DNA from: Podarcis erhardii
Taxonomy: Eukaryota
Strand: one strand, 5' to 3'
DNA length: 64,000 nucleotides
NCBI GenBank assembly: GCA_964252035.1
Contig: OZ176200.1
Shown: one piece after another, positions 11,601 to 64,000 of the stretch
How positions within the stretch are numbered: position 1 is the stretch's first letter
How the letters are laid out: each line of letters starts with the position of its first letter
Made by a program: the position numbers and the translations under genes
Notes under the pieces: model-generated
The model's database searches: none
The model's input: the letters and a program-made list of their open reading frames with translations, nothing else
What the model was told of the DNA's origin: nothing

Positions 11601-12467
11601 GTCATTGAAGGCTTTCCTCAAGTGTCAAAATGAAAAGCAGCCTACAGAGATCTCTGTTAACAGCATCACTTATTTGCAGCTGGCAACACAGTTGGACTTA
11701 TTGTGGCAAGAATGTTTGTGAAGAGCCCACTTCATCAGATGCACCTCTTAATAACTTAAAGGTGCTACAAGGCTCTTTTTTGTGTTTGCTCATAATCCTA
11801 AACACTGGTGCCCAGAATAAATGTTAAGTTATAATACTGAATGTGTGTGTTTCATTTGTAAATATAATTCAAAACAAGCTTAGGAACACAATAAAATAAT
11901 TTCCACTCCTTTGTCACGTGCACAGGGGAGTTCCCAAACTACCAATCTCCTACCACATTTCCAACACTAATTTGTTCTGTTATGGCTCTTTATCTATCTA
12001 TTCATTACAGTATGTTTGCTATTGCTTGGGTATACGTCACATTTACAGACAGATCATGCACAAGTAAGGCAATAAATTCAATCTGATGCATTTGGGAAAT
12101 ATATCATTTGGGAAATATATCTCTGCCAAATGAGAAAGAACCCTTTAGGCAAAGAGATAGGCTTCTGCAAAATGATTCACTATGTTTTCCATAGCGATAT
12201 CAAATTGTACACTGTTTTCCTCCACATGGTTTTTTTACTTATGTAACCTGCCTAAAGGCCCAGTTTCAGGGGGCTAAAAGATAAAGTACATGATCAAAGA
12301 AAATAGTAGCGATTCAAGAAGAGCAAATCATTCACATTCTGAGTGAATAACTCTGGTAAGAACAGGGTGAGGGCCGACCCATGCCGAAATTACACCACTT
12401 CCTCTGTTTTGTTGCCTTCTAATACTAGAAGCAGTGAGAGGAGGGGAAAACTTTTATCACATCTTAC

Positions 12468-12613
12468 TCCCAGTTGTCGGTACTGGTGAAGACTCGAATT
12501 GTATTTCCATTAAAATCCTGCAGGGCAGTAGTTCCAGCAACTGATGATGTGTACAGCTCACTAGGGTTAAAAGGGTTAAACTTCATTCCTGTGATGGCCC
12601 CTCCAGTTCTCAT
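12468..12613 (-). CDS. DDB2: DDB2 coding exon 4 ([37 protein letters not shown]...)
   Basis: Acceptor ttatag|, donor GA|GTAAGA; 146 nt; translated by hand because it is too short for the ORF track. Confidence 0.95.
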
Positions 12614-14120: not shown

Positions 14121-14196
14121 GCCCTGCAATTCCCATATACTCAAGTCTGTGCTACTCTTCCAACTATACTGCTAACAGGTTCAACTGTGGACCATA

Positions 14197-14438
14197 CAGT
14201 GGCACCTCGGGTTAAGTACTTAATTCGTTCCGGAGGTCCGTTCTTAACCTGAAACTGTTCTTAACCTGAAACACCACTTTAGCTAATGGGGCCTCCTGCT
14301 GCCGCTGCGCCACCAGAGCATGATTTCTGTTCTCATCCTGAAGCAAAGTTCTTAACCCGAGGTAATATTTCTGGGTTAGCAGAATCTGTAACCTGAAGCG
14401 TATGTAACCTGAAGCGTATGTAACCCGAGGTACCACTG
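14197..14438 (+). mobile_element. Tigger/pogo-like MITE family A, copy 1 (242 bp)
   Basis: TA|CAGTGGCACCTCGGGTTAA ... TAACCCGAGGTACCACTG|TA; near-identical to the copy at 37532. Confidence 0.9.
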
Positions 14439-15576
14439 TATTACACTACATGCATCCATATGTATTTTCCCTCTAATTTTCTTTTTTAACAGAAAACACC
14501 CTCTAGATCAGGTGTGGATCAGGAAGCTTTTTGGCCAGATCTTCATCTCCCCACACCCTGCAGGCTAACTTTGATAGGTGAGTCAATCAGCTGTCAATCA
14601 GCTGATGTCATAATGTTGTCAACATGCATTTCTGCATCTAGATAATGCAAGCTTCATAGAGGTAAAACAAGAGGAGCTGTGGAACTCTTTACCTGCTCGT
14701 TTTTCTACTTTAAATTGTTCCCCTCCCCAGCTGGTTTTCTCCAGAAATGATAAGGGGAAAAGGAATATGGTGAGAAGATGAGCAACACAACAATGAGAAA
14801 TTATTATCCTGTCCATACAGGGGCAAGAGTGAAAAGAAATGGTACTATGTATTTCCAGAATTAAAGTTTTACATTTGATGTGGTGGAGGAAAGGAAAAGT
14901 TTGTAGATAGCCATAGTTTAGCGTTGCCTCTCATCATAACCTTAATGCTATGAGCCTGAACAAAGCACTACAGTCACACACTCCCCCTTCTCCTTGCCTC
15001 CTCCTGCATGGCTAAATCAGCAGAATTTACTTTAGCTTTTAAAGAACCTCAGCTTAGTTACAATTGAACCAAGGATGTTGTTTTTATAGAAACTCCAGTT
15101 AGCCTATCAAAACAGGCCAGCTTCATAATCCATGGTTTCGAGTTGACTTGTTATGAAACTTACTAGAGTTTTGTTTTAAACCAGGATTCCTGGTTCAAAA
15201 ATAATGCTAAGCCAATATAGTTTAAAAGTGGAAGTACACTCTGCCCGTATCCCTCTCCCAATTGCACAGGAGGAGGTGGATGGAGAGTCAGTCTTTCTCA
15301 AGCTCATTCTAGCTAAACCATCATTTAGCATTATGTGCAAATGCAACCAGAGTGTCATGCAGTCAGGTGGATTTTTAAAAAGGAAAAATCTACACATGGC
15401 TGTATTATGCATACTATAGTATAGAGGAGGGAACATAAACATGGGTCAAACAGTCAATAATAACAGAACTGTAACTCTTTTCTCCTCCACACTACTATGC
15501 AGAGTATGCATTTAGATAGAAATAGAAACTGCAGGAAATTCAGGTGTTCAGCCAGTTTGTAAGGAAAAACACCTAC

Positions 15577-24257: not shown

Positions 24258-26936
24258 AACCATCTGTACACTCCCTGCATATGTATACAAACTTTTTATG
24301 TGTGGCCAGGGATCCTAGGCACACATAGTTAGGTAGCTCATTAAAATTAAGTTTTATTTCATTCTGTACCTTAAAACATGCGGAAGTCACCTAGGATTAT
24401 TTTTTTACATGTATAATAATTTTAAATTAGCAGCAATCTTTCATGCACTCTGTCAATGTCAAAAGGAAAAGGACTTCCAGCAAAGATTCATTATTAGGAA
24501 AGCAAAATGATGGACAAATGGCAATATTCTGCCAGGAAGGAAAGAGCAATCAAGAGCTGCCAAATGAGAGAGGGAAAGAACAATCAAATGCAAATTGCAT
24601 CAGGCATATTTTAATCTATTATTGATGCTGCAATTGATTAAAAAGCCAAATTAATCAATTCATTATTTCAGCTCTAATTGCATCCACAGTCAAACCTCAT
24701 TTGAGTAAATTAAAAGGCACACATTGGATGCAGTTTACAAGCTACATTTTCTAGAATAGTCTATGCTGCTGTTCTGGATTATTCATTGCTCTCATTGTCT
24801 TCTTTTCAGAGACCTATGGATTCCCATCCATTGTCAATGGTTATTCAGTAAAAGCAAATTGTGAAAAAAATATATAGATGTTTCCTTTTACATCCTATTC
24901 ATAAACCCTGAGACATCAGTTACTTCACCGGCTTGAGAAGGATATATAAACCAACAGCTAAAGGGAATGCTTTGCCATGGACTAATTGGGATTTTTGTCA
25001 TACTAATTTGCATTTGCTTCATATTTGAAAGCATAAAACGTACTGTATGTTCCTTCAAACTTAAGCTGATGCACACTTACCCAGAAGTCTCACTGATTTT
25101 CTTTTCTTTAGACAACAGTCTTTTTTCATACTTTCTAATATTTGTATTATTCCTTTTTATTTTATATTAAAAAATACAATAAATATCATATTGAAAAAGA
25201 AGTCTCACTTTGTTCAATGCGACTTACTTCCAAGTAAATGTGCACAGAACTGCAGCCTCATAATTATGTTAAAAATAATGCTACAAGTGGATGTAGCATT
25301 AGAACAGGGGTCTGGATCTGGCCAGCAGGCCATCTCCCCTTGCCCACCCCCACCCCCCAGCCAAGTTTGACAGGTGCATCCACCCACCTAATAATCACTA
25401 CATGTCACTTTTCATGTGAAGTGTGCACAACACTTGTCTGCTGCCAACAATCAGCTGGTAGGTGAGAGTGGGGAAGCCCTGTGCACAGGTCTATTTCATT
25501 CATTCTATTTCATTAATCCATCCATTTATTTATTTTAATAATTGGCATACCACTTAACTGCAATAGCCTCTAGGCAGTTTACAGAAATACAAGAGAAGCA
25601 ATACATAATTTGAAACTATAATAAATTTAAAATGCATGCTGGGATAAAAAAAAGTCTGGAGTAGTCACCAGAGGTTCAGCAGGGAGGGGGCCTGTGTGAT
25701 ATTCTGTGCTGTGCTAGGAAGGGATTTCCCCTGTGCCAACAATTAGCTGATCATCGGTGTCTGCAACACACTTTAGTTGGATCAGGGCCACTGCCTCCCT
25801 TGTTCCATGAATCCCAGTGGCTGCCACCCTTCCTTGTACAGGTAATTCAACACAACCATTGCCTCGGTTTTGCATACCAGAAGACCAGGAACTAACCTTT
25901 CTGAGCAAGCACACTTGGCACATCTCTGCTAACTCCCAAAGTGGTTGTGGGTTTGGTTTTTTTAAGATGGATTTTAATATAGACAATTGTCTGTAGACAG
26001 AATATTACAGCCGAGCAGCTGTACTGAAGGGGGAAGGATCTTGCCCTGAGCAGTACTTTGATGGGAAACCACCTGGGAATCCTGTGTAAGCCACTCTGAG
26101 ATGCTTGGAGGAAAAGCGGAGTATAATAAAGTGGAAACATATAATGAAAGACCTGGTGCACTGAACCTGGGTGGCCCTGTTTTTATCGGTTTTGAAGCAA
26201 ATGGATGCCACCCACAGAGAAGATAGTGGATCCTACATCCAAAGCAAACTCCCCCAGCTATGCGGAAGTATAACAGCGTGTAAATAAATAAATAACCAAG
26301 CAGGCTGATAAGGACCTGTGCTAATCTGTTCCTAGGCCTTACAAAATACTGAGAACAACTGTTGAGGGTGTCAGTTTGGTACGGGGGAGAAGGGAAATTG
26401 AGCAAGAAGACTTATTTGGCCTGAGATCTTCTATACATTGTTGGAACTCCTATCAGTCCCAGCTAGCATGACCAATTGTTAGGGATTATTATTAAGATGG
26501 AGTCCAGCATCTGTAGAGCTGCATGTTCCCTGGTCCTGATGCACAGTATCCTGGAGATAGGAATTAGGAAGCTGAGGCTGTGTTCCATGGAGTTCAAAGC
26601 TGCTAACCCGCACTCTGTATGGGAAGTTTCAGGAAGGAAGAAATATTTTATTTTCACACTCTTTGGAAGCTTTACCTTTATGTATCAATAATGTGTTTAG
26701 GTTCAGAGCTGGATGTCAGTGCTGAACCTGAGACCTTTGAGCATTATAAATAGCATGGGAAAAGGTTTCAGGCAGACAGGTTGGGGGGGGGGAAATAGCG
26801 TCTTAAGACTTTTATCTTTTTTCTCTGTCCCTTCCTGCAAGCTCTGAACAGCATTACACATCTTCTCTTCCAGCAGTGGCTGGAAGGACAGAAGCATTCC
26901 TGTCAGTCTGCAGATACAAGGCAACATTTTGTTGTA

Positions 26937-36853: not shown

Positions 36854-37531
36854 CTGTAAAACAAGGATGGCCAGCTGGTGACCTGTGAGTGACCTCCAGT
36901 CCTGAAATTAACTTTTTTTTCAGGACCCTATTAAATTTCAATCACGATAATAGTAACATATTTTCTAAAGTTTTCCTTTTGAAAAGGAAACAGTTTTCAA
37001 AAGTTGCAAGATGTCATACTGCTATAAATACAAAAGCCAGAGAGAGATGCAGTTCTCGGCCATGTGCGCTATGACTTTGGAGCCCTTACTGTTAGATGAT
37101 GCCAACGATGTTGCAGGACCTGAATATGGATAAAATGTTCGGACTAACCTGCCAAATAAATTTCGGGACCCAGCCCACCATCTGGAGAATATAGTGACTC
37201 AGGACTATAGAAGTTGGCCTTCCCTTCTCTAACCTTTACACTGACATTACATGGGTATGGATTGCTATATCTGGTGTAAAGAAGGGAGAGGTCAGAATAC
37301 TGGCAAGCTGCCCACACCTCTCTCTAGTCATCTGTGTCAGCACTTGCCTCGCCTGATCCACAGCCTTCAAAAGAGGTAGCTGAGCACAGTATTGACCACA
37401 CAATGCCTCCTACGCAGTAGTTTCTAGTCAATTACAGGGCCAGTTTCTGCTTGCTAGTACTGAGCTGTCATATCAATAGACTAGCATAGGATAGGTTTAA
37501 ATCACTGACATCAGAACTACACTAGAAAATA

Positions 37532-37773
37532 CAGTGGTACCTCGGGTTAAGTACTTAATTCATTCCGGAGGTCCGTTCTTAACCTGAAACTGTTCTTCAC
37601 CTAAAGCACCACTTTAGCTAATGGGGCCTCCTGCTGCTGCCACGCCGCCAGAGCACGATTTCTGTTCTCATCCTGAAGCAAAGTTCTTAACCCGAGGTAA
37701 TATTTCTGGGTTAGCGGAGTCTGTAACCTGAAGCTTATGTAACCTGAAGCGTATGTAACCCGAGGTACCACTG
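37532..37773 (+). mobile_element. MITE family A, copy 2 (242 bp)
   Basis: Same TIRs, TA TSD and interior as 14197-14438. Confidence 0.9.
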
Positions 37774-39154
37774 TATATGGGATTGACTTAAAAAGTGTTT
37801 TTATTTACAATGTTGTAGTGTTCACTGTTGCTTCTGTAACGTGCCTTGATGATACAAATGAACTACTTTGATCGGTTGGTAACCTTTTACATAACTAACT
37901 TTATCACAAGTTAAGACAAGTTCTGTGTTCTACAAGGTCTGAAAAAGCCATTCTGGGAACAGGCTTGGTAAATATCTTAAGGTCACACAAAAATGAGAAT
38001 GTAAGAAAGGTTGCCTATCATCTATCTACCTATATCTATCTTCTGTTTTCAGATGCCCTCTATCAGATAATAAGCCTAGGTCAAGGGTCAGCAAACTTTT
38101 TCAGCAGGGGGCTGAAAAAACTGTCCCTCAGACCTTGTGGGGGGCTGGACATTATTGGGGGGGATGAACGAATTCCTATTCCTATGATTTTTGAGAGGGT
38201 CCACTGTCATAACAAGTCATTTATATAGCTGTTTATAGCAGAAGAGCCTGACATATCAGTTCCCCAGTATTGTATACCTGAAGTCCATAGTGGAAAATGT
38301 TTCGTTTAATCACAAGTGTTTATAGCCCTAATGGGGGGTTGGCAGCTGCTTTTTCTTTAACCATTGCATCAAACAGCCTTTTGCCAATGCTACAAATGTG
38401 TAAGTATCCCACTCCTTCCTCTCTCCACTCCCCAGTAAGATTGAATGAAAACCGAGGGACATAAACATGGTGTTTCGAAGTGGTTTTGTCAGCTTTGATG
38501 TACATTGTAGCCACTGTCACTTATTTCAAAATTAAACATTGATTGATCCTGGTTTAAACAGGTTTTGCTTCAGGTTTAAGTGTACTTGTTTGGCTACAAT
38601 TGGAATCCTACAAAAAAATAAAGTTTTATTGGTGAATCTTAACAGTTGAATTACCAGCTCTAGAGGAATGCATAGTATGCAGTTTGTCCAGTCTCCTCTT
38701 ATCCTGATCAACTTTTTTAAGTGGTTAACTATCAAGTGGACTTTGCATAAAGTCTAAACTAATTTCTTCTATGATGCTCCTGCCCATTTTGTTGCACACG
38801 CTTCTTGTGAGTTTGTCTTGTTACTGCCTGTGCTTGGGAGTAGGGACTGCGAAACAACAGTGCAACCCAACGTTGGCATTGTTGAGCTTAGAGGAGGAGT
38901 TCTTTCTATGTACCTTGATAAAGAGTAAGAAATAATCTGCAGTACAAGGTGGCGTGGCAAATGTCTAAAGGAAAGCATACAGCTATGTTTTCAAGTTGTT
39001 TCTGTTTTTGCCCCCAGCCTTTTCCCCTTTATCAGTGTGTGTTCTCTTCTTTGCTGCTCAGGATTTCTACAAATGACTAGTTTTTCTAGGCTGAAGTCCT
39101 TGGCAGATGTCTACACCTGGATAAGGCAATTGCTGAAGGCTATGGGTGGTTCTA

Positions 39155-42620: not shown

Positions 42621-43084
42621 GTGGGCCCTCCCGACTCAGCTCTTCCATCTGCTGTTCCCAGGCATGTCTCTCCCCGCACTCCTTTTCCCCTCCCCAACCC
42701 AAGAGGCCTCTAAATTCTGCAGAATAAGCTGGTGTACAGCTGTTGGTCTCTAGGGTTCTACTTCTGGATGGCTCTGAACTTTGCCTTTCATGTTGTTTTG
42801 GATTTTCTTCTTGGAGGAAGTAATTGGGTAAACTAGTTAATAGCAGCAGAAGTGTGAACAATGAATCTCTCCATCATCAAAGCAGAGGAACTGATTACAA
42901 CGAGTAACAGAAAAATGGAGTTAGAGTAAATACCCCCCTTTCCTTTCCTTTTGCTCCATTTTGTAATAGCTACACAGCCCTTCATATTAATGAATCCCAA
43001 TAAATGTATCTTTTTCTTCACAAAGTTTTTTTTAAAGAGTTTTGTTCTGATATAATAGCTTGGAAGTCCGCCCTCTCCAAAATA

Positions 43085-43310
43085 CAGTGGTACCTCTGGT
43101 TACATAACGCTTCAGGTTACATATGCTTCAGGTTACAGACTCCGCTAACCCAGAAATATTACCTCGGGTTAAGAACTTTGCTTCAGGATGAGAACAGAAA
43201 TTGTGCTCCGGCGGGGCAGCGGCAGCGGGAGGCCCCATTAGCTAAAGTGGTGCTTCAGGTTAAGAACGGACCTCCAGAACGAATTAAGTACTTAACCTGA
43301 GGTGCCGCTG
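43085..43310 (-). mobile_element. MITE family A, copy 3 (226 bp, opposite orientation)
   Basis: Reverse complement of family A with TA flanks; 16 bp shorter through an internal deletion among the repeated TAACCTGAA motifs. Confidence 0.88.
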
Positions 43311-49974: not shown

Positions 49975-50241
<267 letters not shown>

Positions 50242-51747
50242 TGAGTTGGCTTACCCCCTCAGCTAAGAGTTAATGAAATAGAGGTGCTGACCTGGCAACC
50301 ATGAGCAAGATAACATCATATCTTGGGGTTAGGCAGGGAAAACAAAAAGTTAATAAATTTGGAGAGGAATGTTTAAGGGGAGAGAGAGGACAGAAACCTT
50401 TCCAGATGTAGCAGGGATATAGTAAAGGATTAGATTTAGTTTGAAGTGTGTTATGGGAAAAACTTTTTGGTTTTCATGTTTGTTCTTCTAAGTGTCGTTA
50501 TAAACATTTTTCTAGGAATAAAGACATACCGGTAACATAGTCTAATTGACAATGTGGCTGGTATGCTCTATATTTCCCCCTTTTTTTATTTACCTACCCA
50601 GCAAATATTTAACTATTTATTTGTTGGGTTATTGTGTGGTTAAAATATTTTTTTTTAATAAAAGAAAATAAACGGGTTATTTGTTCCATTTTCCACTACT
50701 GTTGTTATGGAGGAATCTGCTCAAATTAATTATCGTACAAGAAATGGCTTTGTTAAAACATGTAAAGCTGATGAAGGGTTTTAGTTTTGTGGGAATGCCC
50801 TCAGAAAGTCTATGGCAGGGGTGAGGTCTCTGCAGCCCACTGGCCAAATTTGGTCCTCGAGGTCATGTTCCCCAAACCACACCCACCTGCCCCCATATGT
50901 GACATCAGGTGTGGGACAGATATAGAGACACAACTGGATCAGCTGTGGGACCAAGTTCTCTGTGAAGAACTCAATCATGAAGGTGATCTCTGCAGAAAGC
51001 ATGGTTGAAGTCACTTCCCTTTAGCTGTTGGACACTTGAGTTCAAACCTGCTTGTTTGGCTGCATGACCCATGGAGCTGATCCCTGAAGGAGGCAACATT
51101 GCAAGCAACACCCCTTGTGCTGCAGTTCATAAGATACTTTGATAGGTGAGTGGGGCAGCTGCCTCACAGGTGGGTTGATCCACCCACAAGTCAAAAGTTG
51201 GCTTGCGGAATGGGGGCATGGATAACCATCTGACCTACTGGGCCAAAACGATTCCCTATCCCTCGTCTATAGGATAAATTCTGAGGGGAAGACAATTTTA
51301 CTTTCATGGCTTTCAGCTACTGTCCCATTAACTGAGTGCTAAGTGCCACACAGGTCAGAAGAATTCATCAGCCCAAAGAATCTGGTCAACAGAAAGCCTT
51401 GCAGGAGGAACAAAAAGTAACCTGGCATAGTGTACTGGGAAGGCTATGTGTGATGGTAGCAAGTAGGTGATGAGAGACTTGGGTGCAGGTTGGAGGACTG
51501 CCAGTACAACTCTGGATGATCATTTCTTGGATTATAAAGATGGGGAGTCAATCAAGTCTTTATGCAACAGAGACTGAGCAGAAGTTTGTTGGCACACACT
51601 CTAGTTGCAGTTACCTAGGGTTGAGCTCAGCAAACTTTGTGTAGGCGGCAAATGCACTGTCTCACACTACTATCAATATGTGTTCCTCCCACACAGCTCT
51701 TTCTTTTTGAGCAGTAAATGTACTTTTGAGATAGATGACTTTGGTAA

Positions 51748-52143
<396 letters not shown>

Positions 52144-52362
52144 TGATTAATCAGCTTTACGGTCTGGGACTTAACAGATGGCAAAACAGCTCAGTCAGCC
52201 TATTGTCCAGCCTCATGTTGCTGGTCATAGGTTAGGCAGTGTTGAGATGTAAATTGTACTTTGCTGTTTTCCTGCCACTTCCTCTTGAATACAGCTGCTT
52301 GTCTCTGTATGTCATGGGAAATAACACTGCTGATACATTATTCCATATGATATCTCTGTTAG

Positions 52363-52551
<189 letters not shown>

Positions 52552-53198
52552 TGACTCTCTTAAGCCGAGGGAGAGTCCTAAAGCAGGAACAAAAAGCAGG
52601 GCCTTTTCTGTGGTGGCCCACCTGCCTATGGAACAGTGCCAGGGAGTAGTTAGGCAAACTCTGTCACAGATCTCTCTTAAGAAGACTTTTCAAAGCTTTT
52701 TTAGAATGACCTTTAGAGATTGAAAGGTGATGGCAGCAGTTGCTGGTTTTGTCTTATTTTCATGTTTGAATACAATATGATTTTATAGTTGTATAATTGT
52801 TTTGTTTTAAAAAGCATTTTACTGTTTGTAAACTGCTTTGTTAGGTAACCAACCAGAAAAGTGGCATGGCAGTTAAAAAAATTAAATAAAAGAAACAAGC
52901 TTGATTTTGGATCTTTGTCACTAACTAAATTTTGTGGGTGGAGAGGCAGCCCAGTGCTTCAATGGATAGTCCTTTAAGCAGATGGGCCATTGCCCTTGGC
53001 TGCAATGTTTGCTGCCCCCTAACCAGACAGAAAACTCAAAAAGCATCAAGGCCCTGTTGAGCCGCTAAATTGAATGGTGCTCATGGAAGAGAGCTGTATA
53101 AGTCAATTACTATACTCTCATTCAAGTGGTGACACTAAAAGAGTAACAAGCAAGAAACATGGGTCCCACCTCGGTTCCAGTACTCCTGAGCATTATAG

Positions 53199-53818
<620 letters not shown>

Positions 53819-54178
53819 TAAAGTAAGTCGTGTCTTGTATCATCCTGCTGAAATCAGCACTCACCACTATTTCTCTATGGAATAGAAACAAAATGCATAA
53901 TATACCTGGCTTGATAGGAACATGCAAAGCTACCAGCCCAGAGTATTTGTCAATCTAACCAAATATTGACTACACTGCACTCCAGGGTGAAACCTGATCC
54001 ATTTTTAGTGGAGTTGTCTGGGATCAAACCTGGAACCTTGTTCTGCAAATAAGCAATAAACCCCCCTCCACATAAAGGATGTCCATTGTCTGTGTTGGAT
54101 GGGAGGGGGAGGGGAAGCATTCAGTTAATCTTCTGAAATATTTTTGGAACTAGGGACTGATAACTTTCTCCCCTCTAG

Positions 54179-54418
<240 letters not shown>

Positions 54419-55538
54419 TGAGAATATGAATTCCCATTAACAAGAGCATACAGAGACTATGTCCTTGCAAATTGTGAGATAAATGTCCTAGTCTAATGGA
54501 ATGCAGGGCTGTTGTTAGTTAGACCTGCTGGAAGAGCAGGAGCTATGACTGGCACTGTGCCTCTCCTCTGTCCCGCCCTGATGTAGCTCTACCTCGGCTT
54601 GTTCCACCCATTAGTGTGAGGACGCTGGTAGGATTTTCCTCTCCAGCTGTTGCTGATCTCAGGGAAAGAAGAACATTCCTCCAGTTGCAACAAAGGCAGT
54701 TCTGGATTCTTGATTTGCATCTGTTCACTATGAAGAGAGATGTCAGCTAGCCAGGCCCTTCTTACTCAGACACAGTTCATGTTAGTTCTACAGTGAAGTT
54801 AGTAGATAGCAAACATTCTGGCTTTCGTAGCTGGGTGCTTTGCATTCAAAACCCGACCAGATGGCATACTGAGCATGCTGGTCCAGTGGCTGTTGGCACA
54901 AGATTACAAAGAAGGAAAAGACAAGAGAAGTACAGGAAATAATAAATTCCTATCTTAACCTTTACTGCAATGTAGAGTCTGCTTTTGTTAACACAAATAT
55001 CACTGGCAGTAGCTATTCTGCAGCATAACCTTGCCCTTTTCTCGATTTAAAAAGGCTTGTTTGCCAATCCACAGGTATTCATACCAGGAGGAGCAAAACA
55101 GTCACTTCTATGATACCCTGAAGGCCTCGGCCTGTATGAAGTTAGTATGAAACTTAAGACTACTTAGGGTACCTGTTTCCTTGCTTCTCCTTTGCTGTAG
55201 CTTCTTAATACTTTCTAGTTAAGGAGATGGGCAGTGTTAGCACACTCTTTTTCAATTTCTCCCAAATAAACACCTTTTTAGCTTTCTTCAAATAGACCAC
55301 CTTCTCTCTACCCTGATTGTAGTCACTTAGGGCTTTTAATGTAGTTATTTCCAGAACTGGTCAAGGTTACTGGAAAGATTGTGTTTTTGAACACCTGCTA
55401 TTCTGCTCATTCTCGTTCTTTCTCTCCCCCCCACTCCCCCCGGGCTAATGGTGACTTCTTTGCCTTCCATGTTTTGCATCTTCCTCTTACTTGTTCTTCT
55501 CCTAGAAAGATGCATGATTTGGAAATGGGACACTTTAA

Positions 55539-55784
<246 letters not shown>

Positions 55785-56131
55785 TAACTTGCTTGCTAGT
55801 GTGCTTTTGGGGTATGGATGGAAATTTTCCAGTAGGACCTGGATGGCCCCAGGATGCCTGTTGCCCAAACACTTGAGTTTTCTGAGAGAATTCTATAATA
55901 AACCAAGCCATTTATGAAAGGGGTCAGCAGCATGCTAAGAAATTGCAGAGAGAGAAAGAACCAATGGGGCACTTTTTAACTACTGGGAAAGACGGAGGAT
56001 AGATAAATTACTTCAAAGTTCTTCCAAAGGGACAGGAAAAGGCATGGACTTGCTCCCAATACGGGCTCTGCGGTATGAGACTGAAGGAAGATGGCAATTG
56101 CTTCAAGTTGCTATTCCTTCTTTAAAAATGC

Positions 56132-56565
56132 TTTTATTAAGTTTTGTAGATACAGGAATATATTGGCAGAAGATAGGGAAGAAAAGAGCCCTACCCTCCC
56201 TAGATTCCCCTAATCTGATGTGAGCAATTCTCATCCCAAATTGTCTTTCCATAGAAGTCTTTGCGTTCCAGGTGGGCAGAAATCTTGTTCTTTTGTCTCA
56301 ATATCTGAAATAAAACATGACCAGATATCATAAAACTTGTTGGTTGGTTGTTCATTTCTTCTGGCATGTAATTCGTGAGTCAATTTTTCCATTAGCGCCA
56401 AGTTCCATGCTTGAATATTCCACTGCTGAGTTAGCATCCAGGGATCTCCAATGCTTGGCAATAGAGATGCTGCTATTCCCGAGACTTCCTGTATGTAGCT
56501 GGGCCTGGCCATTTGTGCATTTATTTTCCATGCCAAATGGCCAAAAATGCTTCAATATACCAGGA
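56132..56565 (-). mobile_element. 5'-truncated, frameshifted L1 (ORF2 C-terminus and 3' UTR)
   Basis: SIAKHWRS... and QWNIQAWNLALMEKLTHELH...KFYDIWSCFISDI in two frames; AATAAAA at the 3' end. Confidence 0.65.
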
Positions 56566-58164
56566 CTGTGTTCCCTTGCTCAGTGGCGGTGAAAGCAGAG
56601 CTGCATATTGAGAAATAACACATAAAGGGGAACTTGGGAGCAGGAGTCTTTCACGAGAAGCTGGCAAATTCTGGAACTGAGCAGTGATTTAACATAAACT
56701 TTCAGCACTATATGCCAGCCCAGATGGAGAGGCAGTCATCTGTTGTCACCAGTGACATAAAATGAACGTTATCACACACCTGTTTCTCTGGATGGTTGTG
56801 AGCATGGTAATGCTAGCCTTGCTCTGGGGCTAGTGGCTTGCCACATGGCCAGAGCCACAACACAATAAACTTAAATAGATGCCTTATGGTTAGTGATCAT
56901 CCGATTCCACACTAAAATAGTTTTTGTATCCACCAGCCTGATCTACTGGGAAGCACATAGGAATAGGGGCCACCTGGATCTTGGGGATTTCATTCATGCT
57001 TTAAAAATGTATTTCTAGAAATGTGATTTGTTTTTCTTTTTTACAGGTACTAAAATCTTTCAAAACCCAGCACTTGGGTTTGCATGAAACACGCATTGCT
57101 GAGTTATCATTATTAAATATTCTAGTACCAACTTACTTTGCTTGATCTGCCTATAGTAACTAATTAAAACAGGAATACTACAAGGATATCTGTAGCATGA
57201 AATAAGTACAAGAAGTAGATCCAAACTGCTTTTTGGTTTATCATTTGTGAAAAATCCTTCCAGGCACCATCCTGGTTTGCTTCTGCCTGTCATGTTGTCT
57301 TATTTATTTATAAAATAGTTGTATACCACTATATCAAAGCAGTTTACAGCAGTAAAAGCATAAAAAATTAAAATATGTTATGAAGGTAGGGACACTGAGC
57401 TTTCTATACTTGGTTTGCTGTGGTTTGTCTAGCTTGCTGCATGTGAGCTGAATTTATTGATCTCTGTCAAAGAACAATTCATCAGTTTTTCTTTTTGCTT
57501 TGCCAGGGTCGTAGTGTATACCCAAGGGCTTATGGGAACTGGGTCACTCCTCTTTTTAAAACCTATTGGTGCATCTTCCCCATCTAAATACTTCAATAAC
57601 ATGCAGTTGTATAGTTAATGCAGACAATTTGTTATTTCACTGAGTCAGTTGAACTGATGCACTATTTTCCTTTCGTTGCTGGAAGTGATATTTTAAATTG
57701 TTCTCCTTAAATAGAAAGTTGGAGCAAGTGCTGATGGGTTTTTTAAAAAGGCATTCTCTGGATGGTTACACCCCTTTCAGGTGGTCTTTAACTTCACTAA
57801 TGTGTGAATTCTGCATGGTGGTTGACTCTTCAGCATGAGTCAATTGAGATGACATGGGCAGCTGGAGAGGGTATCACTGTCTAGGAAGCATCTTCTGGCT
57901 GCTAATGCCCAAGAGCTTTTAAGGTGCTTCTCTGTACAATAATGGCTTTGTTCCAGTAGGCCACTATAATATAGTTGTATGGAGAATGAAGGCTAACACT
58001 GACCCTAAACTCGTTTGGAAATGAGACACACAGATTTCAGTGGAATTGTTATTAAATAAGTGTGCATGGTATCTCAACCTTAGCTTCACTTCCATATGTG
58101 TGCATTGCCAGCATCTCTGGAAACCAGAAGGGAAAAGAAAGCAAGTCTCATTTCATTTTAGTGA

Positions 58165-58338
<174 letters not shown>

Positions 58339-58520
58339 TTGCTTCCTCCCTTCCCCCTTAAGGTGTGCATCCTGCAAGCATTTTCTCCAGAGGTCACCAA
58401 ATCATTGGCCTCCAACTTGCGTCAAAAACCATGAAAACAATCTGGAACTTTCTGAGGACACTCTTATTGTAACCAATGCTTCCTTTTAAACATCTAGAAT
58501 TATGGTGATGATTTTTTTCT

Positions 58521-58526
58521 AATAAA
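58521..58526 (+). terminator. PACSIN3: Candidate PACSIN3 polyadenylation signal (AATAAA)
   Basis: AATAAA about 180 nt after the stop, followed by U/GU-rich sequence. Confidence 0.55.
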
Positions 58527-59405
58527 GGTATATAAAATTTTCTGAATCCTGTGTGTTATAATGGAATAGAAGGTGGAAAACGCCCCATAAAGCGCAAAGC
58601 ACCCAAACTCCTTTCCTCTTCTGTGCAGCGATTCCAACAAGCCTATTGTCTGCCAGCTGAATAAGTAGCAGTTGCTCTAAAAGCGAACATTAAAGGATAG
58701 TTAGAAGCCAACTGTGGAATGGCAACTCTCCAGCAGCTTATTCCTAGGCAAGAGTCAAACTAGCCATCTCAATTGCACCCCAACTACCTGTCTAGCAAAT
58801 ATATTACATAAGCTCCTATCCCAACTGCTGAATCTGTTGATAGTTTGTAGTACTGACATCATATGGAAGCAAGGTATTGAAAACTATGCTGTTAAGAAGT
58901 GCAACTACAATCTGATATGACTTACAGGACAAACCATAGTATCCTTCAGTATAGTTACATTGATTAGATGGAAAGCACTCAAACAGCCATTATGTTTGTG
59001 GTAACAGATGTACATCAACTATACATGTGGGGCTCCTGTGCTACATCAGGATAGTTGTGAGAGAAGGTGCTAGTGGTGTTCAAATCCACCCAAGGAAGGT
59101 TTGCCCAGAATGAATGGCACAGCATTTCAACCTATAATAGAGTGACTGCTAAGAACTGCCTTCGCCTCACTTCTTCACATGCCCCATGGAGCTATTTTTA
59201 CAGAGCACCACTGTTAGGCAGTGGACCACTTTGGGTCAGGTCCTCAGCAATCTTGCAAAAAGTTAGAAAGATCACTTGCTGTAGTTGGTGTCTTTTATGT
59301 AGCAAACATGCTTTGCCTTGGGGTTGAAGTTTTGCAACAGGTGCAAGTCTGTTGAAATATGGAGTGCAGCTGTTGCAACAAGTAATTGCTCTCATTCCTG
59401 TGCTG

Positions 59406-59411
59406 TTTATT
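59406..59411 (-). terminator. Candidate polyadenylation signal of the THAP9-like gene
   Basis: TTTATT on the + strand, about 630 nt downstream of the stop on the minus strand; unverified. Confidence 0.35.
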
Positions 59412-59729
59412 GACCTGGCCCAAGGCTTCAGCCACTTGGTGCTGGACTTTGCTTCTTGATAGCCAAAGGTCAAGAGTTATGTTCTAATCTGGGCTGCTGC
59501 CTCAGCCTTGCTTCTACAGACCAGAGTGGGGTTGGTAACAAAAGTGCTGGGGGAGGGGGAAGTCCCAATTTGGGGGACTAGTTGGAAAACAGGCATATAG
59601 TTCTTAAAACTCCAGAGCTGGGACTGCACAACAAAGGAAGCCATGATAAGTCCATAAGCGAAGTTCCAATATCCACTTGGGGAAAAACTTTATAGAGACC
59701 AGCTTTGCCAATGTAAATAGGATACCAAT

Positions 59730-59796
59730 ATTCCTGCATTGCGGGGAGTTGGACTAGATGATCCTTGGGGTCCCTTCCAATTCTACGATTCTGTGA
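59730..59796 (+). mobile_element. 3' fragment of the same CR1-tailed SINE
   Basis: ATTCCTGCATTGCGGGGAGTTGGACTAGATGATCC...CCCTTCCAATTCTACGATTCTGTGAT matches the tail of 4779-4909. Confidence 0.7.
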
Positions 59797-60038
59797 TCCC
59801 CATGCTGTAAGCCCTGCAAAAATGCTTCTCAAAGGCACACACACGTCACTTTCATGTGAAAAGTTAGAATGACCTTCCTGCATGTCAGTTCCATGTGGAC
59901 CTCCCTGCCTGTGTCTGCGCCAATAAAAAAGCCAAGTGCAAAGCAGCCTCGTAGTTTTCTACCAGCTTGCAGCATACCATAAGCTACCGCTACTCTTACA
60001 AGGCCATGTAAACATAAGCATTCAGCTTCCCACCACCA

Positions 60039-61983
60039 TCAAATAGGCATGTACCATTCCATAAGTCCACGTGTTTGCTGAGGCCAGTCCCTGCTGGGGC
60101 CCTTTGCATTCCCCGTCTGCTGCTTATCATTAGCCACTTTCAAAGAGCTGCTACATTCATGAGTCGGTGGCATGGACAACTGCCCCTGCGCTGCCTCAAG
60201 CCACAGTTCCAAGAAGGTTCGCACAAGCTCCTGCAGCAGAGTGACGTAATGGTTGGAAACTACAGTGTTGCTCTCAAAGAGGTGGTTGCCCAGGGATGAG
60301 AAAAGACTGGGCTCCTCACTCACATCTGCCAAGATGGCCAGCTGCCGCGTCAAGAACCCGCGGTGGCTGGAGTCTCCAAGGAACAAGGAAGGCAGGCCAA
60401 CAACCTGCTTTGCTCGGCGGATCACCTTCCGTACGGACTCTGCCGGGAGGTACTTTCTTCCCTTGCTCTGCACGCACAGCAGGGCACTGCCCGCAGGCAC
60501 ACCCTTACAAGGGCACAAGAGGGCAGCGCAGCATTCGGCGCAGGAGAGGAGGGGCAGCAGCTTCCCCAAAACAACGCAGGAAATGCAGGCGATGGCGTCT
60601 TCCTCCAACTCGGCCAGAAAGGCTGGGGCTATGCCCTGTGTCTCTTGTGGAGGCCCAGTGCCCTGAGACAAGCGCCAGATCTGCCCGCGAGCCAGAGGCC
60701 AGGAAGCCTGCAACTGGAGGTTAGTTCTTCTGCGTAAGGATATGTCAAGCAGGTTTGGTGGATCGAGGCCCAGACGAGAAAGAGCTCTGTTCAAGACAAC
60801 CCTGTACGCCCGCTGGAAGGTCCATGCGGGGCCAACACCTTTGTGCCCACGGGCTTGCTGTATGGCTCCCCTACACCACTCCAGAGGGTCCAGACTCCAC
60901 CAACAGGACAGCAAAGAAGTGGTGGGCTCGTCTTCTGCCTGTAGATGGGTCTGCGCCAGCCACTGAAAGCTGCGCAGGTTCACCAGGAAGCCAATGAAGC
61001 CCCATCGATGCCTGCTCAGCCCTACCAGCTCCCCGGTGGCAGTGCGGAGTTTGCGAAGCAGGTTCTCATACTCGTTGCAGAGGTTGTTGAGGGCGCTGGC
61101 ACTAGCACGGGAGAGGGTTGCCTTGAAACCTTTCCCATAGATGCTGCAGCTGCTGCACGTGTCAAAAATGGCACTCAGCAGCCCAATAAAGTGGGCGGTG
61201 GCTTCATGACCATGAAATTGAGGCAGGTTGAGCCTCGCTGCAAAATGCAAGGCCTGAACCGTGCCCTCGCTGAACAACTGTGTGGCCCCATTTCCCCACA
61301 CCTGCTGTTCTTGCGGGCTGATCGCTCCGGCCTGGCATGCTGCCTGGAGCACCACTTCTTCCTGCAGAGCCCCAAGATGCAGGAGGTAATCCCAGCAGAC
61401 CGCCTTGCCGCTCACCTGGAGGCTGCCGGCAGCTTGCAGCAAGCGGTGGATCAGCGTCAACAAATGGCTGGGATCGAAGTAGTACGCTATTTCCAGCGTA
61501 GGAGTAGCTGGATGGAAAAATGTGGACTTGACAAAGAGGCCGTCCACCACCACTCCCAGCCGCCTGGCTGTCTCGATATTGGGAGCTGTGGCATCAGACG
61601 TCACAGATACCACCTGCACACCAATGTCGTACAGTTTGAGGATACAGTGGCATAGGAGCTGGGCTTGTATGTCACCTCTAAGGGTGGCGAGGAGGAAGTA
61701 GCCAACAGGCACTATCCACTGGCCTTGGAATCCAACAGCCACAAGCAGGAGGGCTTCTCCGGCTGCCGAAACCTCATCCGCATCATATTTACCAGCACCA
61801 AAGTCCATCAAACCGTGCAAACGCCCGGTGGAAGGGTCATAGTGGCTTCTCCTTTCCAAAGGGATGGAGCCCATAAGGAGGGAGCACAACTTGAAGGTTT
61901 TCTCCCCTGCTTGGGATCTCCCTGCCAGAGCATCGAAGGCTTGTTGGCTGAATCCCGGCTCGTAATCCAGGTTTGAGAGCCAC
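60039..61983 (-). CDS. Terminal coding exon of a THAP9-like (P-element superfamily) transposase gene, 647 codons, no stops or frameshifts
   Basis: The 616-aa track ORF extends 31 codons upstream (WLSNLDYEPGFSQQAF...) to a phase-2 acceptor tttctttcccacacttcttccctcatag| at 61984/61983. Motifs GLMDFGAGKYDADE, GQWIVPVGYF, VTSDAT, YFDPSHLL, ATQLFSE, GFIGFLVN, SLDPLE, SCAEC and SNHYVTLL match my recollection of the human THAP9 last exon. No symbol is given because orthology versus paralogy is unresolved. Confidence 0.9.
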
Positions 61984-62838
61984 CTATGAGGGAAGAAGTG
62001 TGGGAAAGAAAGCTAATCAGCTCCATGTTTGGTTCAAACAAAAATCTTTCTTCTACTGCCAAACCTCGGAGCCTGAGGATAGTATGTTTCTTTGCCCTCG
62101 TGCTTATGAAAAATCAAAGCATGATGTTACTTTCATAAACTATTTTAGGCCATGCTTGTGCTAGAGGGCCTGAGAATAGTTCCACGTGGGAAGGCAGAGC
62201 CTGCATCAGTTCTGCTTATATACTCTAGTTCTCTGCAGTATTTGAAATCAAGAAGAAGAAGAAATCTCCCATAAACCATCAGGTGAGCTTGAAAGTCTGT
62301 TTTCTTCCCAACACACCAAATCACCCATGTGGTTTCCTTTAGGCTAACAGTGCATTTGGCACAGTTTGTGTGGGTCACTCTTAGGTTGCTTCCTTATGGG
62401 CTGCTATTGCTATCTAATTGTTGCCTTTCTGTAAAATCTACAAGCGGAATCACAATTGACTTTCCATAGTAAAGGGCACTTTGTGCTTTTCCCACGTGTA
62501 CATCCCCACCACGTTATGTCCACCGCTCTCTACACCACTATTTTATGAGTCCATTTTTTAACACCTATATTTTAATTATCACTGAAAGATGTTTCTGGCT
62601 CTTGAAATTAAAGAGGCACATCATTATAGCACGGTACTTTGATTTTGTTCCTTCCAAGTGCCGTTTTTGTGTGGTTCTGTGATACACGCGGCTTTGCTAT
62701 GTCTGCTTTTCTTGATGTTTCCATAGTCCAAAGTTGTTTTCCCCGTATCTGGGCTCTCACAGAATAGCAGAGTATGTTTTCTAGTGACACATCTGATTTT
62801 AGTGTTTTAACCAATTTTTACCATTTTGCATTATATAT

Positions 62839-63044
62839 CTTGGGTTACAGACGCTTCAGGTTACAGACCCCGCTAACCCAGAAATAGTACCTCAGGTTAA
62901 GAACTTTGCTTCAGGATGAGAACAGAAATCGCACGGTGGCAGCGGGAGACCCCATTAGCTAAAGTGGTACCTCAGGTTAAGAACAGTTTCAGGTTAAGAA
63001 CGGACCTCCAGAACGAATTAAGTTCTTAACCCAAGGTACCACTG
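62839..63044 (-). mobile_element. MITE family A, copy 4 (one terminus truncated)
   Basis: Family A interior ending GGTACCACTG|TA at 63044; the left TIR lacks its outer bases. Confidence 0.82.
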
Positions 63045-64000
63045 TAAACCACATAGAGACTATTGTAGTTAAGTGGCACGTGCGTCTTATGATATTTTTT
63101 CTTTGGTGCCACTGAGTGTTTGGATGGATGGGAGAAGACCAACCAATCCAGACTATCTTTCTTAGGTTGCAATCCTATATGTGGGACAGAGAGAGAGAGA
63201 GCATACTTTTTTTGAGAGAGCAAGACATATTTCTGAGAAAACCTTTAGAGGCTTGCAGTGATGCTTATACCTCCAAAGTCTAGTTTTATCAACTAGCACA
63301 GCTGTTTCCTTTTCCTTGTGAATTGTCCATTCCTCTGCTTCCTCTTGCTAATAAATCTGATCTTACTTTAACCTCCAATGGATGAAAAGCTTAACTTTTC
63401 TCTCTCACACACACACCACACACACAGGGCACACTACATCCAAGTCTTTTTGTTCACCTTGGCTTTCCCCTGATCAGAGTTTTGGGCATCATTTACCTCT
63501 CTCAAATTGCTTCCATACAACAATGTGATGCCAAGCCAGTGCAGAGGTTGTACTGTCATGCTGTACTAAACAAGGGACAGCCCAGGTTTAAATTCTGACT
63601 CACTCCTGAAGCTCCCTGGATGACCTTGGGTCAGTCACCATCTCTTAGCTTAACTTGCTTCACAGGGTTGTTGTGAGGATAAAATGGGGGTTGGACATAG
63701 AACTAAGTATGCTACCTTAGGTTCCTTGGAGGAATTTGGGATATAAACATAGGGCCCAATTCAACTAACCAGTCTCACTTGTGGAAGCCTGTGCAAGGAC
63801 TTCCGCTAGTGCAATGAAGGTTTCTCCCTATCCTCCCACTGCCTGCCCCCTGCACCTCTGATATCAGCTCTGAGGTGGTCAGGAGAACCCCTAGAAGAGC
63901 AAGCCTGAGCTGACAGTGTGATCTGTTTAGGGCTACACTGAATTCCTCCCACAATAACCCATGTAAAGTGATCAATCCGTTGGCTAGTACATTACTCAAA

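What the first reader, a model, noticed from the sequence alone, without database searches (positions are those of the whole stretch)
60039..61983. Intact THAP9-like P-element transposase gene at a locus where mammals have none: candidate undescribed domesticated transposase
Seen: a 1945-nt spliced terminal exon with 647 uninterrupted codons, a good acceptor and GC-rich coding sequence, lying tail-to-tail with PACSIN3. The L1 fragment at 56132-56565 is frameshifted by comparison, and I found no P-element TIR or 8-bp TSD on the in-window side. Established: human THAP9 is a domesticated P-element transposase between SEC31A and LIN54, and in human PACSIN3 is followed by ARFGAP2 with no transposase gene. 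As I recall it, the THAP9 last exon also starts in phase 2 just before WLS, and the GKxDADE motif is THAP9-like. Inference: this is a second THAP9 paralog, or a relocated and fast-evolving THAP9, kept by purifying selection as a host gene in squamates rather than a mobile copy.
Basis: partly seen in the sequence, partly recalled or inferred. Interest (0 to 1): 0.85.

Follow-up and report, generated by a model that had tools for sequence, protein, structure and literature searches.

The report
Second THAP9-family gene in reptiles
This lizard exon is the large last exon of an old, selectively maintained host gene derived from a P-element transposase; databases call it THAP9, but it is a separate sister gene of the real THAP9, sits next to PACSIN3, and was found here only in lizards, snakes, turtles and crocodilians.

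Summary
A 647-codon minus-strand open frame (60039-61983) starts at a good splice acceptor. It encodes the RNaseH-N, GTP-binding-insertion and THAP9_C domains of a P-element-type transposase, and it lies tail-to-tail with PACSIN3.

The window comes from a lacertid lizard. The exon product is 96% identical to Podarcis raffonei 'DNA transposase THAP9'.

That database name hides a paralogy:
- Group A is this gene. It was found in squamates, turtles and crocodilians, always between an ARFGAP2-type gene and PACSIN3.
- Group B is the real THAP9. It was found in mammals, birds, turtles, a crocodile, a gecko and a cordylid, next to LIN54.
- A and B proteins are only about 30-37% identical. Turtles and Crocodylus carry both.
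- The two groups are sister clades. AU tests reject A being a sauropsid-only offshoot of B.
- Both groups share intron positions, including the phase-2 acceptor just before WLSN.

dN/dS within group A is 0.18-0.26. No flanking inverted repeats and no extra copies were seen.

However, gene models already exist (mislabelled), and the gene is not specific to squamates. I found no paper describing the paralogy. I rate it a new member of a known kind, of moderate interest. The scan's other note on this stretch (s1-225669) covers its catalytic residues.

The parts
60039..61983 (-). Terminal (sixth) coding exon of the group-A THAP9-family gene. It has 1 split-codon base, 647 codons and a TGA stop at 60041-60039. 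It encodes the RNaseH-like N part, the GTP-binding insertion domain, the RNaseH C part and the THAP9_C domain.
   Evidence: It is 96% identical over all 647 residues to residues 262-908 of Podarcis raffonei P0001. The AlphaFold2 model has mean pLDDT 77.6, and its best PDB fold matches are the Drosophila P transposase entries 6pe2 and 6p5a.
61984..62012 (-). 3' splice acceptor: a polypyrimidine tract ending in AG, for a phase-2 intron.
   Evidence: The same acceptor position and phase occur in 7 other loci of both paralog groups.
62013..64000 (-). 3' part of the last intron. No coding exon of this gene lies here. It contains a SINE/MITE-like repeat at about 62800-63110.
   Evidence: tblastn of P0001 against the window finds only the terminal exon. 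The stretch 62238-64000 aligns to the Podarcis intron at 91% identity.
59406..59411 (-). AATAAA hexamer about 630 nt downstream of the stop codon. It is a candidate polyadenylation signal (inference only).
   Evidence: Read from the sequence. No transcript evidence is available.
49975..58338 (+). 3' two-thirds of the convergent neighbour PACSIN3. It contains F-BAR exons (inside 51748-52143, 52363-52551 and 53528-53818), an SH3 exon inside 55539-55784, and the last exon ending near 58335.
   Evidence: The stretch is collinear with the annotated FCH+SH3 gene of Podarcis. PDB searches favour PACSIN3 over PACSIN1/2: 70.9 vs about 40 bits, 67.6 vs 55, and 44.6 vs 35.

Best explanation
The exon is the last and largest coding exon of a single-copy, intron-containing host gene descended from a P-element transposase. 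This gene, called 'group A' here, is an ancient paralog of THAP9 and not its orthologue.

Both genes descend from one ancestral gene that already had introns, because they share intron positions. They separated before the mammal/sauropsid split. Group A has stayed between ARFGAP2 and PACSIN3 in squamates, turtles and crocodilians. I did not find it in birds or mammals.

The full protein, read from the Podarcis orthologue, has an N-terminal THAP zinc finger followed by the RNaseH-like catalytic core. That core is interrupted by the GTP-binding insertion domain and followed by the THAP9_C domain.

Inferred mechanism: the protein binds specific DNA sites through the THAP finger and acts on DNA through a P-transposase-type core. 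The core keeps the three acidic residues shown to be needed for human THAP9 excision and integration. Like mammalian THAP9, it lacks the canonical beta-1 Asp of mobile P transposases, having Gly there.

Shown here: gene identity, paralogy, synteny, purifying selection, fold and residue conservation. Inferred only: expression, DNA targets and catalytic activity.
For: Domains and fold: Pfam RNaseH_N, GBD and THAP9_C. phmmer matches DmTNP 6p5a. The AlphaFold2 model (pLDDT 77.6) matches 6pe2/6p5a with E 2e-15 and target-normalised TM 0.65.

Paralogy:
- The group-A profile scores group A at 1484-1864 bits for full-length proteins, and group B at only about 420-643 bits, with 32-37% identity.
- Both groups occur in the same species.
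- In the trees A, B and A+B each have 100% support under LG+G4 and under LG+C20+F+G4. Group B follows the species tree, with mammals included.
- AU tests reject A + sauropsid B as one clade, p = 4e-4 and p = 1e-5.

Synteny:
- Group A is head-to-head with an ArfGAP2/3-type gene and tail-to-tail with PACSIN3 in Podarcis and Alligator. In Chelydra the same ArfGAP exons lie upstream and the PACSIN last exon lies downstream.
- Group B lies between a SEC31A-like WD40 gene and a LIN54-like CXC gene in Apus. It is tail-to-tail with the LIN54-like gene in Hemicordylus and Eublepharis.

Shared gene structure: intron positions at about aa 26/27 and 92/93 (tblastn HSP boundaries), and an identical phase-2 acceptor before WLSN in 8 loci.

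Selection: dN/dS is 0.18-0.26 within group A. The window versus P. raffonei pair has 37 synonymous and 29 nonsynonymous changes, binomial p = 4e-8.

Not mobile: the gene has six coding exons, no flanking inverted repeats, and one contig per protein.

Residues: the equivalents of hTHAP9 D304, D374, D414, D519 and E613 are all present in the window protein. Their roles in hTHAP9 are taken from PMC8230255.
Against: - No transcript or protein evidence was available for this species.
- The outgroup used to root the tree consists of unnamed P-like representatives. Group A has a long stem (0.8-1.0 substitutions per site), so long-branch attraction could exaggerate the age of the duplication.
- No group-A orthologue or remnant was found outside sauropsids. 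The inferred losses in mammals and birds rest on tree topology plus absence from protein databases.
- The canonical beta-1 Asp (DmTNP D230) is Gly in every group-A protein, and squamate A has Lys at the hTHAP9 E776 position. Catalytic activity is therefore uncertain.
- At nucleotide level the exon (96.6% identical to P. raffonei) is no better conserved than the 56001-62240 stretch that contains it (96.8%). For this close pair, the evidence of constraint comes from the dN/dS deficit only.
Confidence: 0.85

Rival explanations
1. It is simply the lineage's THAP9 orthologue, as annotated. On this reading it was moved next to PACSIN3 by chromosomal rearrangement and evolved fast.
For: NCBI and UniProt name the squamate and crocodilian proteins 'DNA transposase THAP9'. 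No other THAP9-family protein from lacertids surfaced. Domain order and the last-exon boundary are the same as in THAP9.
Against: Turtles and Crocodylus porosus carry this gene and a separate THAP9. Gecko and cordylid THAP9 lie at the LIN54 locus and group with bird, turtle and mammal THAP9, not with this gene. Alligator group A is 74% identical to turtle group A but only 36-37% identical to turtle THAP9.
Confidence: 0.03
2. Group A is a sauropsid-specific duplicate of THAP9 that diverged very fast after duplication. Its position outside all of THAP9 would then be a long-branch artefact, and no loss in mammals need be assumed.
For: Group A was found only in sauropsids. Its stem branch is long, 0.81-1.04. 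The tree tool itself warns that long branches meet.
Against: Group B is monophyletic with mammals included, at 100% support under two models. AU tests reject A + sauropsid B as one clade, p = 4e-4 and p = 1e-5.
Confidence: 0.1
3. It is a recently inserted or still-mobile P-like transposon copy, or a decaying pseudogene whose long ORF is there by chance.
For: The ORF is long and GC-rich, and the protein keeps the acidic residues of active relatives.
Against: The gene has the same locus and exon structure in lizard, alligator and turtle. It is interrupted by introns. No flanking inverted repeats were found. Each protein sits on one contig. dN/dS is 0.18-0.26.
Confidence: 0.02

Closest known systems
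THAP9 (human PHSA/THAP9 and its orthologues in mammals, birds, turtles, gecko and cordylid; 'group B' here)
   Same: Same domain order: THAP finger, Tnp_P_element, RNaseH_N, GTP-binding insertion, RNaseH_C, THAP9_C. Similar length, about 900 aa. Shared intron positions, including the phase-2 intron before WLSN. The GxGxxDADE motif is present. The canonical beta-1 Asp is missing in both. The hTHAP9 D304, D374 and E613 equivalents are present.
   Different: Only about 30-37% identical. It forms a separate, fully supported sister clade. It sits at a different locus (ARFGAP2-PACSIN3, not SEC31A-LIN54). It has six coding exons where THAP9 has five. It co-exists with THAP9 in turtles and crocodiles. 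It keeps Asp at the D374 position, where sauropsid THAP9 has Ala or Gly.
Drosophila P-element transposase (PDB 6P5A/6PE2) and mobile P-like elements (zebrafish Pdre; unnamed representatives P0097-P0125)
   Same: RNaseH-like fold with a GTP-binding insertion domain (Foldseek E 2e-15). The second Asp (DmTNP D303) and the Glu (E531) equivalents are conserved.
   Different: About 20% identity. The first catalytic Asp (DmTNP D230, the 'DEMAI' motif in mobile relatives) is Gly here. The gene has introns and a fixed locus, and lacks TIRs and TSDs, so it is a host gene and not an element.

Membership tests
P-element / THAP9 transposase superfamily | RNaseH-like catalytic domain split by a GTP-binding insertion domain | tested here: met
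   Pfam PF21787 E 7e-39 and PF21788 E 6e-27. The fold matches 6pe2/6p5a with E 2e-15.
P-element / THAP9 transposase superfamily | THAP9-type C-terminal domain | tested here: met
   PF22824 E 1.5e-11.
P-element / THAP9 transposase superfamily | N-terminal THAP C2CH zinc finger | tested here: met
   The finger is not in the window, because the upstream exons lie beyond base 64000. PF05485 is present in the orthologous full-length proteins. C62, H65, P29 and W38 are invariant across 9 group-A proteins.
P-element / THAP9 transposase superfamily | Catalytic acidic residues | tested here: inconclusive
   The equivalents of hTHAP9 D304, D374 and E613 (DmTNP D252, D303, E531) are present. The DmTNP D230 equivalent is Gly in all group A proteins and Lys in most mammalian THAP9 proteins (PMC8230255; bioRxiv 10.64898/2026.09.03.748810).
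THAP9 orthogroup (orthologue of human THAP9) | Falls inside the clade of mammalian, avian and turtle THAP9 | tested here: not met
   It is a sister clade, 100% support under two models. AU tests give p = 4e-4 and p = 1e-5.
THAP9 orthogroup (orthologue of human THAP9) | Lies between SEC31A and LIN54 | tested here: not met
   Here the neighbour is PACSIN3, and in Podarcis and Alligator the other neighbour is an ARFGAP2-type gene. Bird, cordylid and gecko THAP9 lie beside a LIN54-like gene.
THAP9 orthogroup (orthologue of human THAP9) | No separate, closer THAP9 in genomes that carry it | tested here: not met
   Chelonia, Chelydra and Crocodylus porosus have both genes. For lacertids themselves this could not be tested, because there was no genome access.
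Active P-like DNA transposon | Terminal inverted repeats and 8-bp target-site duplication around the coding unit | tested here: not met
   No inverted-repeat pair flanks the Podarcis gene. The 5' end of the gene lies outside the window.
Active P-like DNA transposon | Multiple dispersed near-identical copies | tested here: inconclusive
   Each group-A protein sits on a single contig in the protein collection. The genome itself could not be searched.

The most novel reading that the evidence does not exclude
Amniotes inherited two domesticated P-transposase genes, and lineages kept different ones. Mammals and birds kept only THAP9. Lacertids, anguimorphs, iguanians and snakes apparently kept only the PACSIN3-linked paralog. 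Turtles and crocodilians kept both. The paralog is the copy that retains the full set of acidic residues needed for hTHAP9 catalysis, whereas sauropsid THAP9 has lost D374. It may therefore be the catalytically competent P-type recombinase of reptiles, partly redundant with THAP9.
Probability: 0.25. Interest if true: 0.7.

Novelty: new member of a known kind. Interest (0 to 1): 0.5.

Why it matters
THAP9 is usually treated as the only P-element-derived gene of amniotes, and its function is still unknown. A second, equally old and selectively maintained paralog would matter in three ways.

- It shows that the label 'THAP9' covers two non-orthologous genes in reptile annotations.
- Published 'THAP9 orthologue' comparisons drew their lizard, alligator and turtle sequences from NCBI orthologue lists (PMC10824691). 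They may therefore mix the two genes, which would affect claims of class-specific substitutions at catalytic residues such as D374. I could not check which sequences that paper used.
- It offers a natural experiment: lineages with one gene, the other, or both. That could help work out what domesticated P transposases do.

Tried and rejected
- Relocated THAP9 orthologue: rejected, because both genes occur in single turtle and crocodile genomes.
- Ophiophagus 'THAP9, partial' (P0019) as a possible snake group-B gene: BLASTP shows it is a fragmentary group-A model, so I left it out of the trees.
- PACSIN paralog assignment: the most conserved F-BAR exon did not discriminate (130.2 vs 129.5 bits). 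More variable exons did.
- ARFGAP2 versus ARFGAP3: PDB scores are nearly tied (68.1 vs 61.8 bits; 85.4 vs 86.0). 'ARFGAP2' therefore rests mainly on its adjacency to PACSIN3, which I take from my own knowledge of the human map.
- Literature: Hammer et al. 2005 is not held. Five full-text searches found no paper describing a THAP9 paralog, duplication or PACSIN3 linkage. The 2026 preprint on THAP9 RNaseH domains never uses 'paralog', 'duplicat' or 'synten'.
- Earlier scan notes gave nothing beyond this stretch.
- The organisms behind the Logan ORFs P0009, P0011, P0012 and P0015, which branch at the base of squamate group A, could not be named. Only an SRA run id was returned.

Full report
**Observation**

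On the minus strand the frame is open from 61982 to the TGA stop at 60041-60039, giving 647 codons. Just upstream lies a pyrimidine-rich AG acceptor...ttccctcatag|G TGG CTC TCA. The exon therefore begins at 61983 with the third base of a split codon, followed by WLSNLDYEPGF.

GC content is 0.54-0.59 in the exon and 0.39-0.47 in the flanks. Pfam finds TNP-like_RNaseH_N (E 7e-39), TNP-like_GBD (E 6e-27) and THAP9_C (E 1.5e-11). phmmer against the PDB finds the Drosophila P transposase entry 6p5a, with the window's SVTSDATAPN aligned on DmTNP D303.

An AlphaFold2 model built from a 63-sequence alignment has mean pLDDT 77.6. Its only strong PDB fold matches are 6pe2 and 6p5a (E 2e-15, target-normalised TM 0.65). 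RAG1, Transib and Hermes follow far behind.

**Organism and neighbours**

The window is collinear with Podarcis raffonei chromosome CM049750.1 at 91-97% nucleotide identity, and the exon product is 96% identical. The window therefore comes from a lacertid lizard.

In Podarcis the gene spans 18.3 kb and has six coding exons. Only the last exon falls inside the window. The previous exon lies about 3.9 kb upstream, beyond base 64000.

The convergent plus-strand neighbour has FCH and SH3 domains. Its variable exons score clearly higher against PACSIN3 than against PACSIN1 or PACSIN2 in the PDB: 70.9 vs about 40 bits, 67.6 vs 55, and 44.6 vs 35.

In Podarcis and Alligator the gene is head-to-head with a 540-aa gene. 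That gene's first exons encode the ArfGAP zinc finger of the ARFGAP2/3 type. In Chelydra the same ArfGAP exons lie upstream and the PACSIN last exon lies downstream. Calling the neighbour ARFGAP2 rests mostly on the human ARFGAP2-PACSIN3 adjacency, which is my own knowledge and not a tool result.

**Two genes under one name**

A search with the exon returned proteins named 'DNA transposase THAP9' from squamates, turtles and alligator at 60-96% identity. A profile of nine of these then split everything named THAP9 into two blocks.

- Group A: squamates, Chelydra, Pelusios and Alligator. Full-length proteins score 1484-1864 bits.
- Group B: mammals, birds, and other proteins from turtles. These score about 420-643 bits and are only 32-37% identical to alligator group A.

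Cluster look-ups show both groups in the same species.
- Chelonia mydas: group A is 'uncharacterized protein LOC102930032', and group B is 'DNA transposase THAP9'.
- Chelydra serpentina: KAG6937998 (A) and KAG6924647 (B).
- Several sea turtles carry both.
- Crocodylus porosus: A0A7M4F936 (A) and A0A7M4F4A2 (B).

A search seeded with the gecko group-B protein found squamate group B only in Eublepharis and Hemicordylus. More than 100 bird and mammal THAP9 proteins appeared in the same list, but none from lacertids, anguimorphs, iguanians or snakes.

**Phylogeny**

I first built a tree from 15 group-A, 17 group-B and 20 outgroup sequences. The outgroups were full-length P-like representatives from an exhaustive profile search. 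In that tree A, B and A+B each have 100% support.

A careful IQ-TREE run under LG+C20+F+G4 on 36 rows gave the same result. Group B reproduced the species tree: mammals, then turtles, then gecko plus cordylid, then crocodile plus birds. Group A ran alligator, turtles, squamates, with the window next to Podarcis and then Rhineura.

Forcing group A together with sauropsid group B is rejected by AU tests, p = 4e-4 and p = 1e-5. Given the outgroup root, the duplication predates the mammal/sauropsid split, and group A was later lost in mammals and apparently in birds.

There are caveats. The outgroups are unnamed, and group A's stem branch is long. No group-A sequence outside sauropsids was found: in the exhaustive search nothing scores between group A and group B.

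**Synteny of the true THAP9**

In the swift, group B lies between a 1275-aa WD40 gene (SEC31A-like) and an 804-aa gene with the Tesmin/TSO1 CXC domain (LIN54-like). In Hemicordylus and Eublepharis it is tail-to-tail with the same LIN54-like gene. Group B is therefore THAP9 proper, and group A is the extra gene.

**Common origin as a gene**

tblastn maps of group-A and group-B proteins on their loci place exon boundaries at about aa 26/27 and 92/93 in both groups. All eight loci examined have an AG acceptor exactly one base before the Trp codon of WLSN/WLST. Four of these are group A loci including the window, one is an unnamed Logan genomic contig of group A, and three are group B loci.

Group A has one more coding exon than group B (six versus five). 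The shared introns argue for duplication of a gene that already had introns, and against two independent captures of an intronless element.

**Selection and mobility**

Nei-Gojobori dN/dS on the terminal exon gives these values:
- 0.24 for the window vs P. raffonei (37 synonymous and 29 nonsynonymous differences)
- 0.18 for the window vs alligator
- 0.26 for the window vs Chelydra
- 0.22 for alligator vs Chelydra

For the close lacertid pair, the deficit of nonsynonymous changes has binomial p = 4e-8. For that pair the exon's overall nucleotide identity (96.6%) does not exceed that of the 56001-62240 stretch containing it (96.8%). The evidence of constraint for this pair is therefore the dN/dS deficit, plus an intact 647-652-codon frame in four lineages.

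No inverted repeats flank the Podarcis gene. The repeats found there are intronic SINE-like elements and microsatellites. Each group-A protein sits on one contig.

**Residues and likely mode of action**

Numbering follows Equus THAP9, which matches the published human positions at D304, D374 and E613. The window protein keeps Asp at positions 304 (LMDFG), 374 (VTSDATAP), 414 and 519, and Glu at 613 (DPLEWC). D304, D374 and E613 are the residues whose mutation lowered hTHAP9 excision and integration (PMC8230255).

At the position of DmTNP D230 (hTHAP9 K282, per bioRxiv 10.64898/2026.09.03.748810), all group-A proteins have Gly. Five mobile outgroups have Asp there, and most mammalian THAP9 proteins have Lys.

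Sauropsid THAP9 has lost D374: it is Ala in turtles and the gecko, and Gly in birds. Crocodilian group A has Gln at 613, and squamate group A has Lys at 776.

I infer a THAP-finger DNA-binding protein with a P-transposase core that may still cut or join DNA. Neither activity nor targets were tested.

**Comparison with what is known, and novelty**

The gene has database models, but under a misleading name. NCBI orthologue lists used in PMC10824691 include '6 lizards, 4 alligators, 7 turtles' as THAP9 orthologues. I could not check which sequences those were.

None of the full-text searches found a description of a THAP9 paralog, a duplication, or PACSIN3 linkage. The key 2005 paper on chicken Pgga is not held, so prior mention there cannot be excluded.

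I classify this as a new member of a known kind, a second domesticated P-transposase gene of amniotes. Interest is moderate at 0.5. The main reading is well supported. The biology (function, expression, true pattern of losses) is still open.

Noticed in passing
window ~14121-14445, 37501-37804, 43004-43297, 62800-63110; L001 ~12290-12540, 25040-25270, 25845-26110: A SINE/MITE-like repeat family with the core TACAGTGGTACCTCGGGTTAAG occurs several times in the window. It also occurs in the introns of the Podarcis orthologue, in both orientations.
   Followed up: no
proteins P0020, P0021, P0081, P0093 (turtles, gecko) and P0045-P0047, P0094 (birds), position aligned to hTHAP9 D374: The true THAP9 of turtles and the gecko has Ala, and that of birds has Gly, at the catalytic D374 position. 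Every group-A protein and mammalian THAP9 keep Asp there.
   Followed up: partly
P0016, P0087 (Alligator, Crocodylus group A); squamate group A proteins: Crocodilian group A has Gln at the hTHAP9 E613 position. Squamate group A, including the window protein, has Lys at the E776 position, where turtles and crocodilians keep Glu.
   Followed up: no
L003 (Chelydra serpentina JAHGAV010000020.1) 1-32251: The assembly's annotation has a single 903-aa minus-strand gene model spanning the whole locus and overlapping the transposase-derived gene. It is probably a fused ARFGAP2/PACSIN3 model.
   Followed up: no
P0009, P0011, P0012, P0015 (Logan contigs; L008 = SRR31946008_283474): Four unnamed genomic ORFs of 552-609 aa are group-A terminal exons that branch at the base of the squamate group-A clade. 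Their source species could not be identified. They might show whether early-branching squamates keep both paralogs.
   Followed up: partly
window 62238-64000 vs 56001-62240: Relative to Podarcis raffonei, the intron upstream of the exon is clearly more diverged (91.4% identity, with indels) than the exon plus the intergenic and PACSIN3 3' region (96.8%).
   Followed up: no
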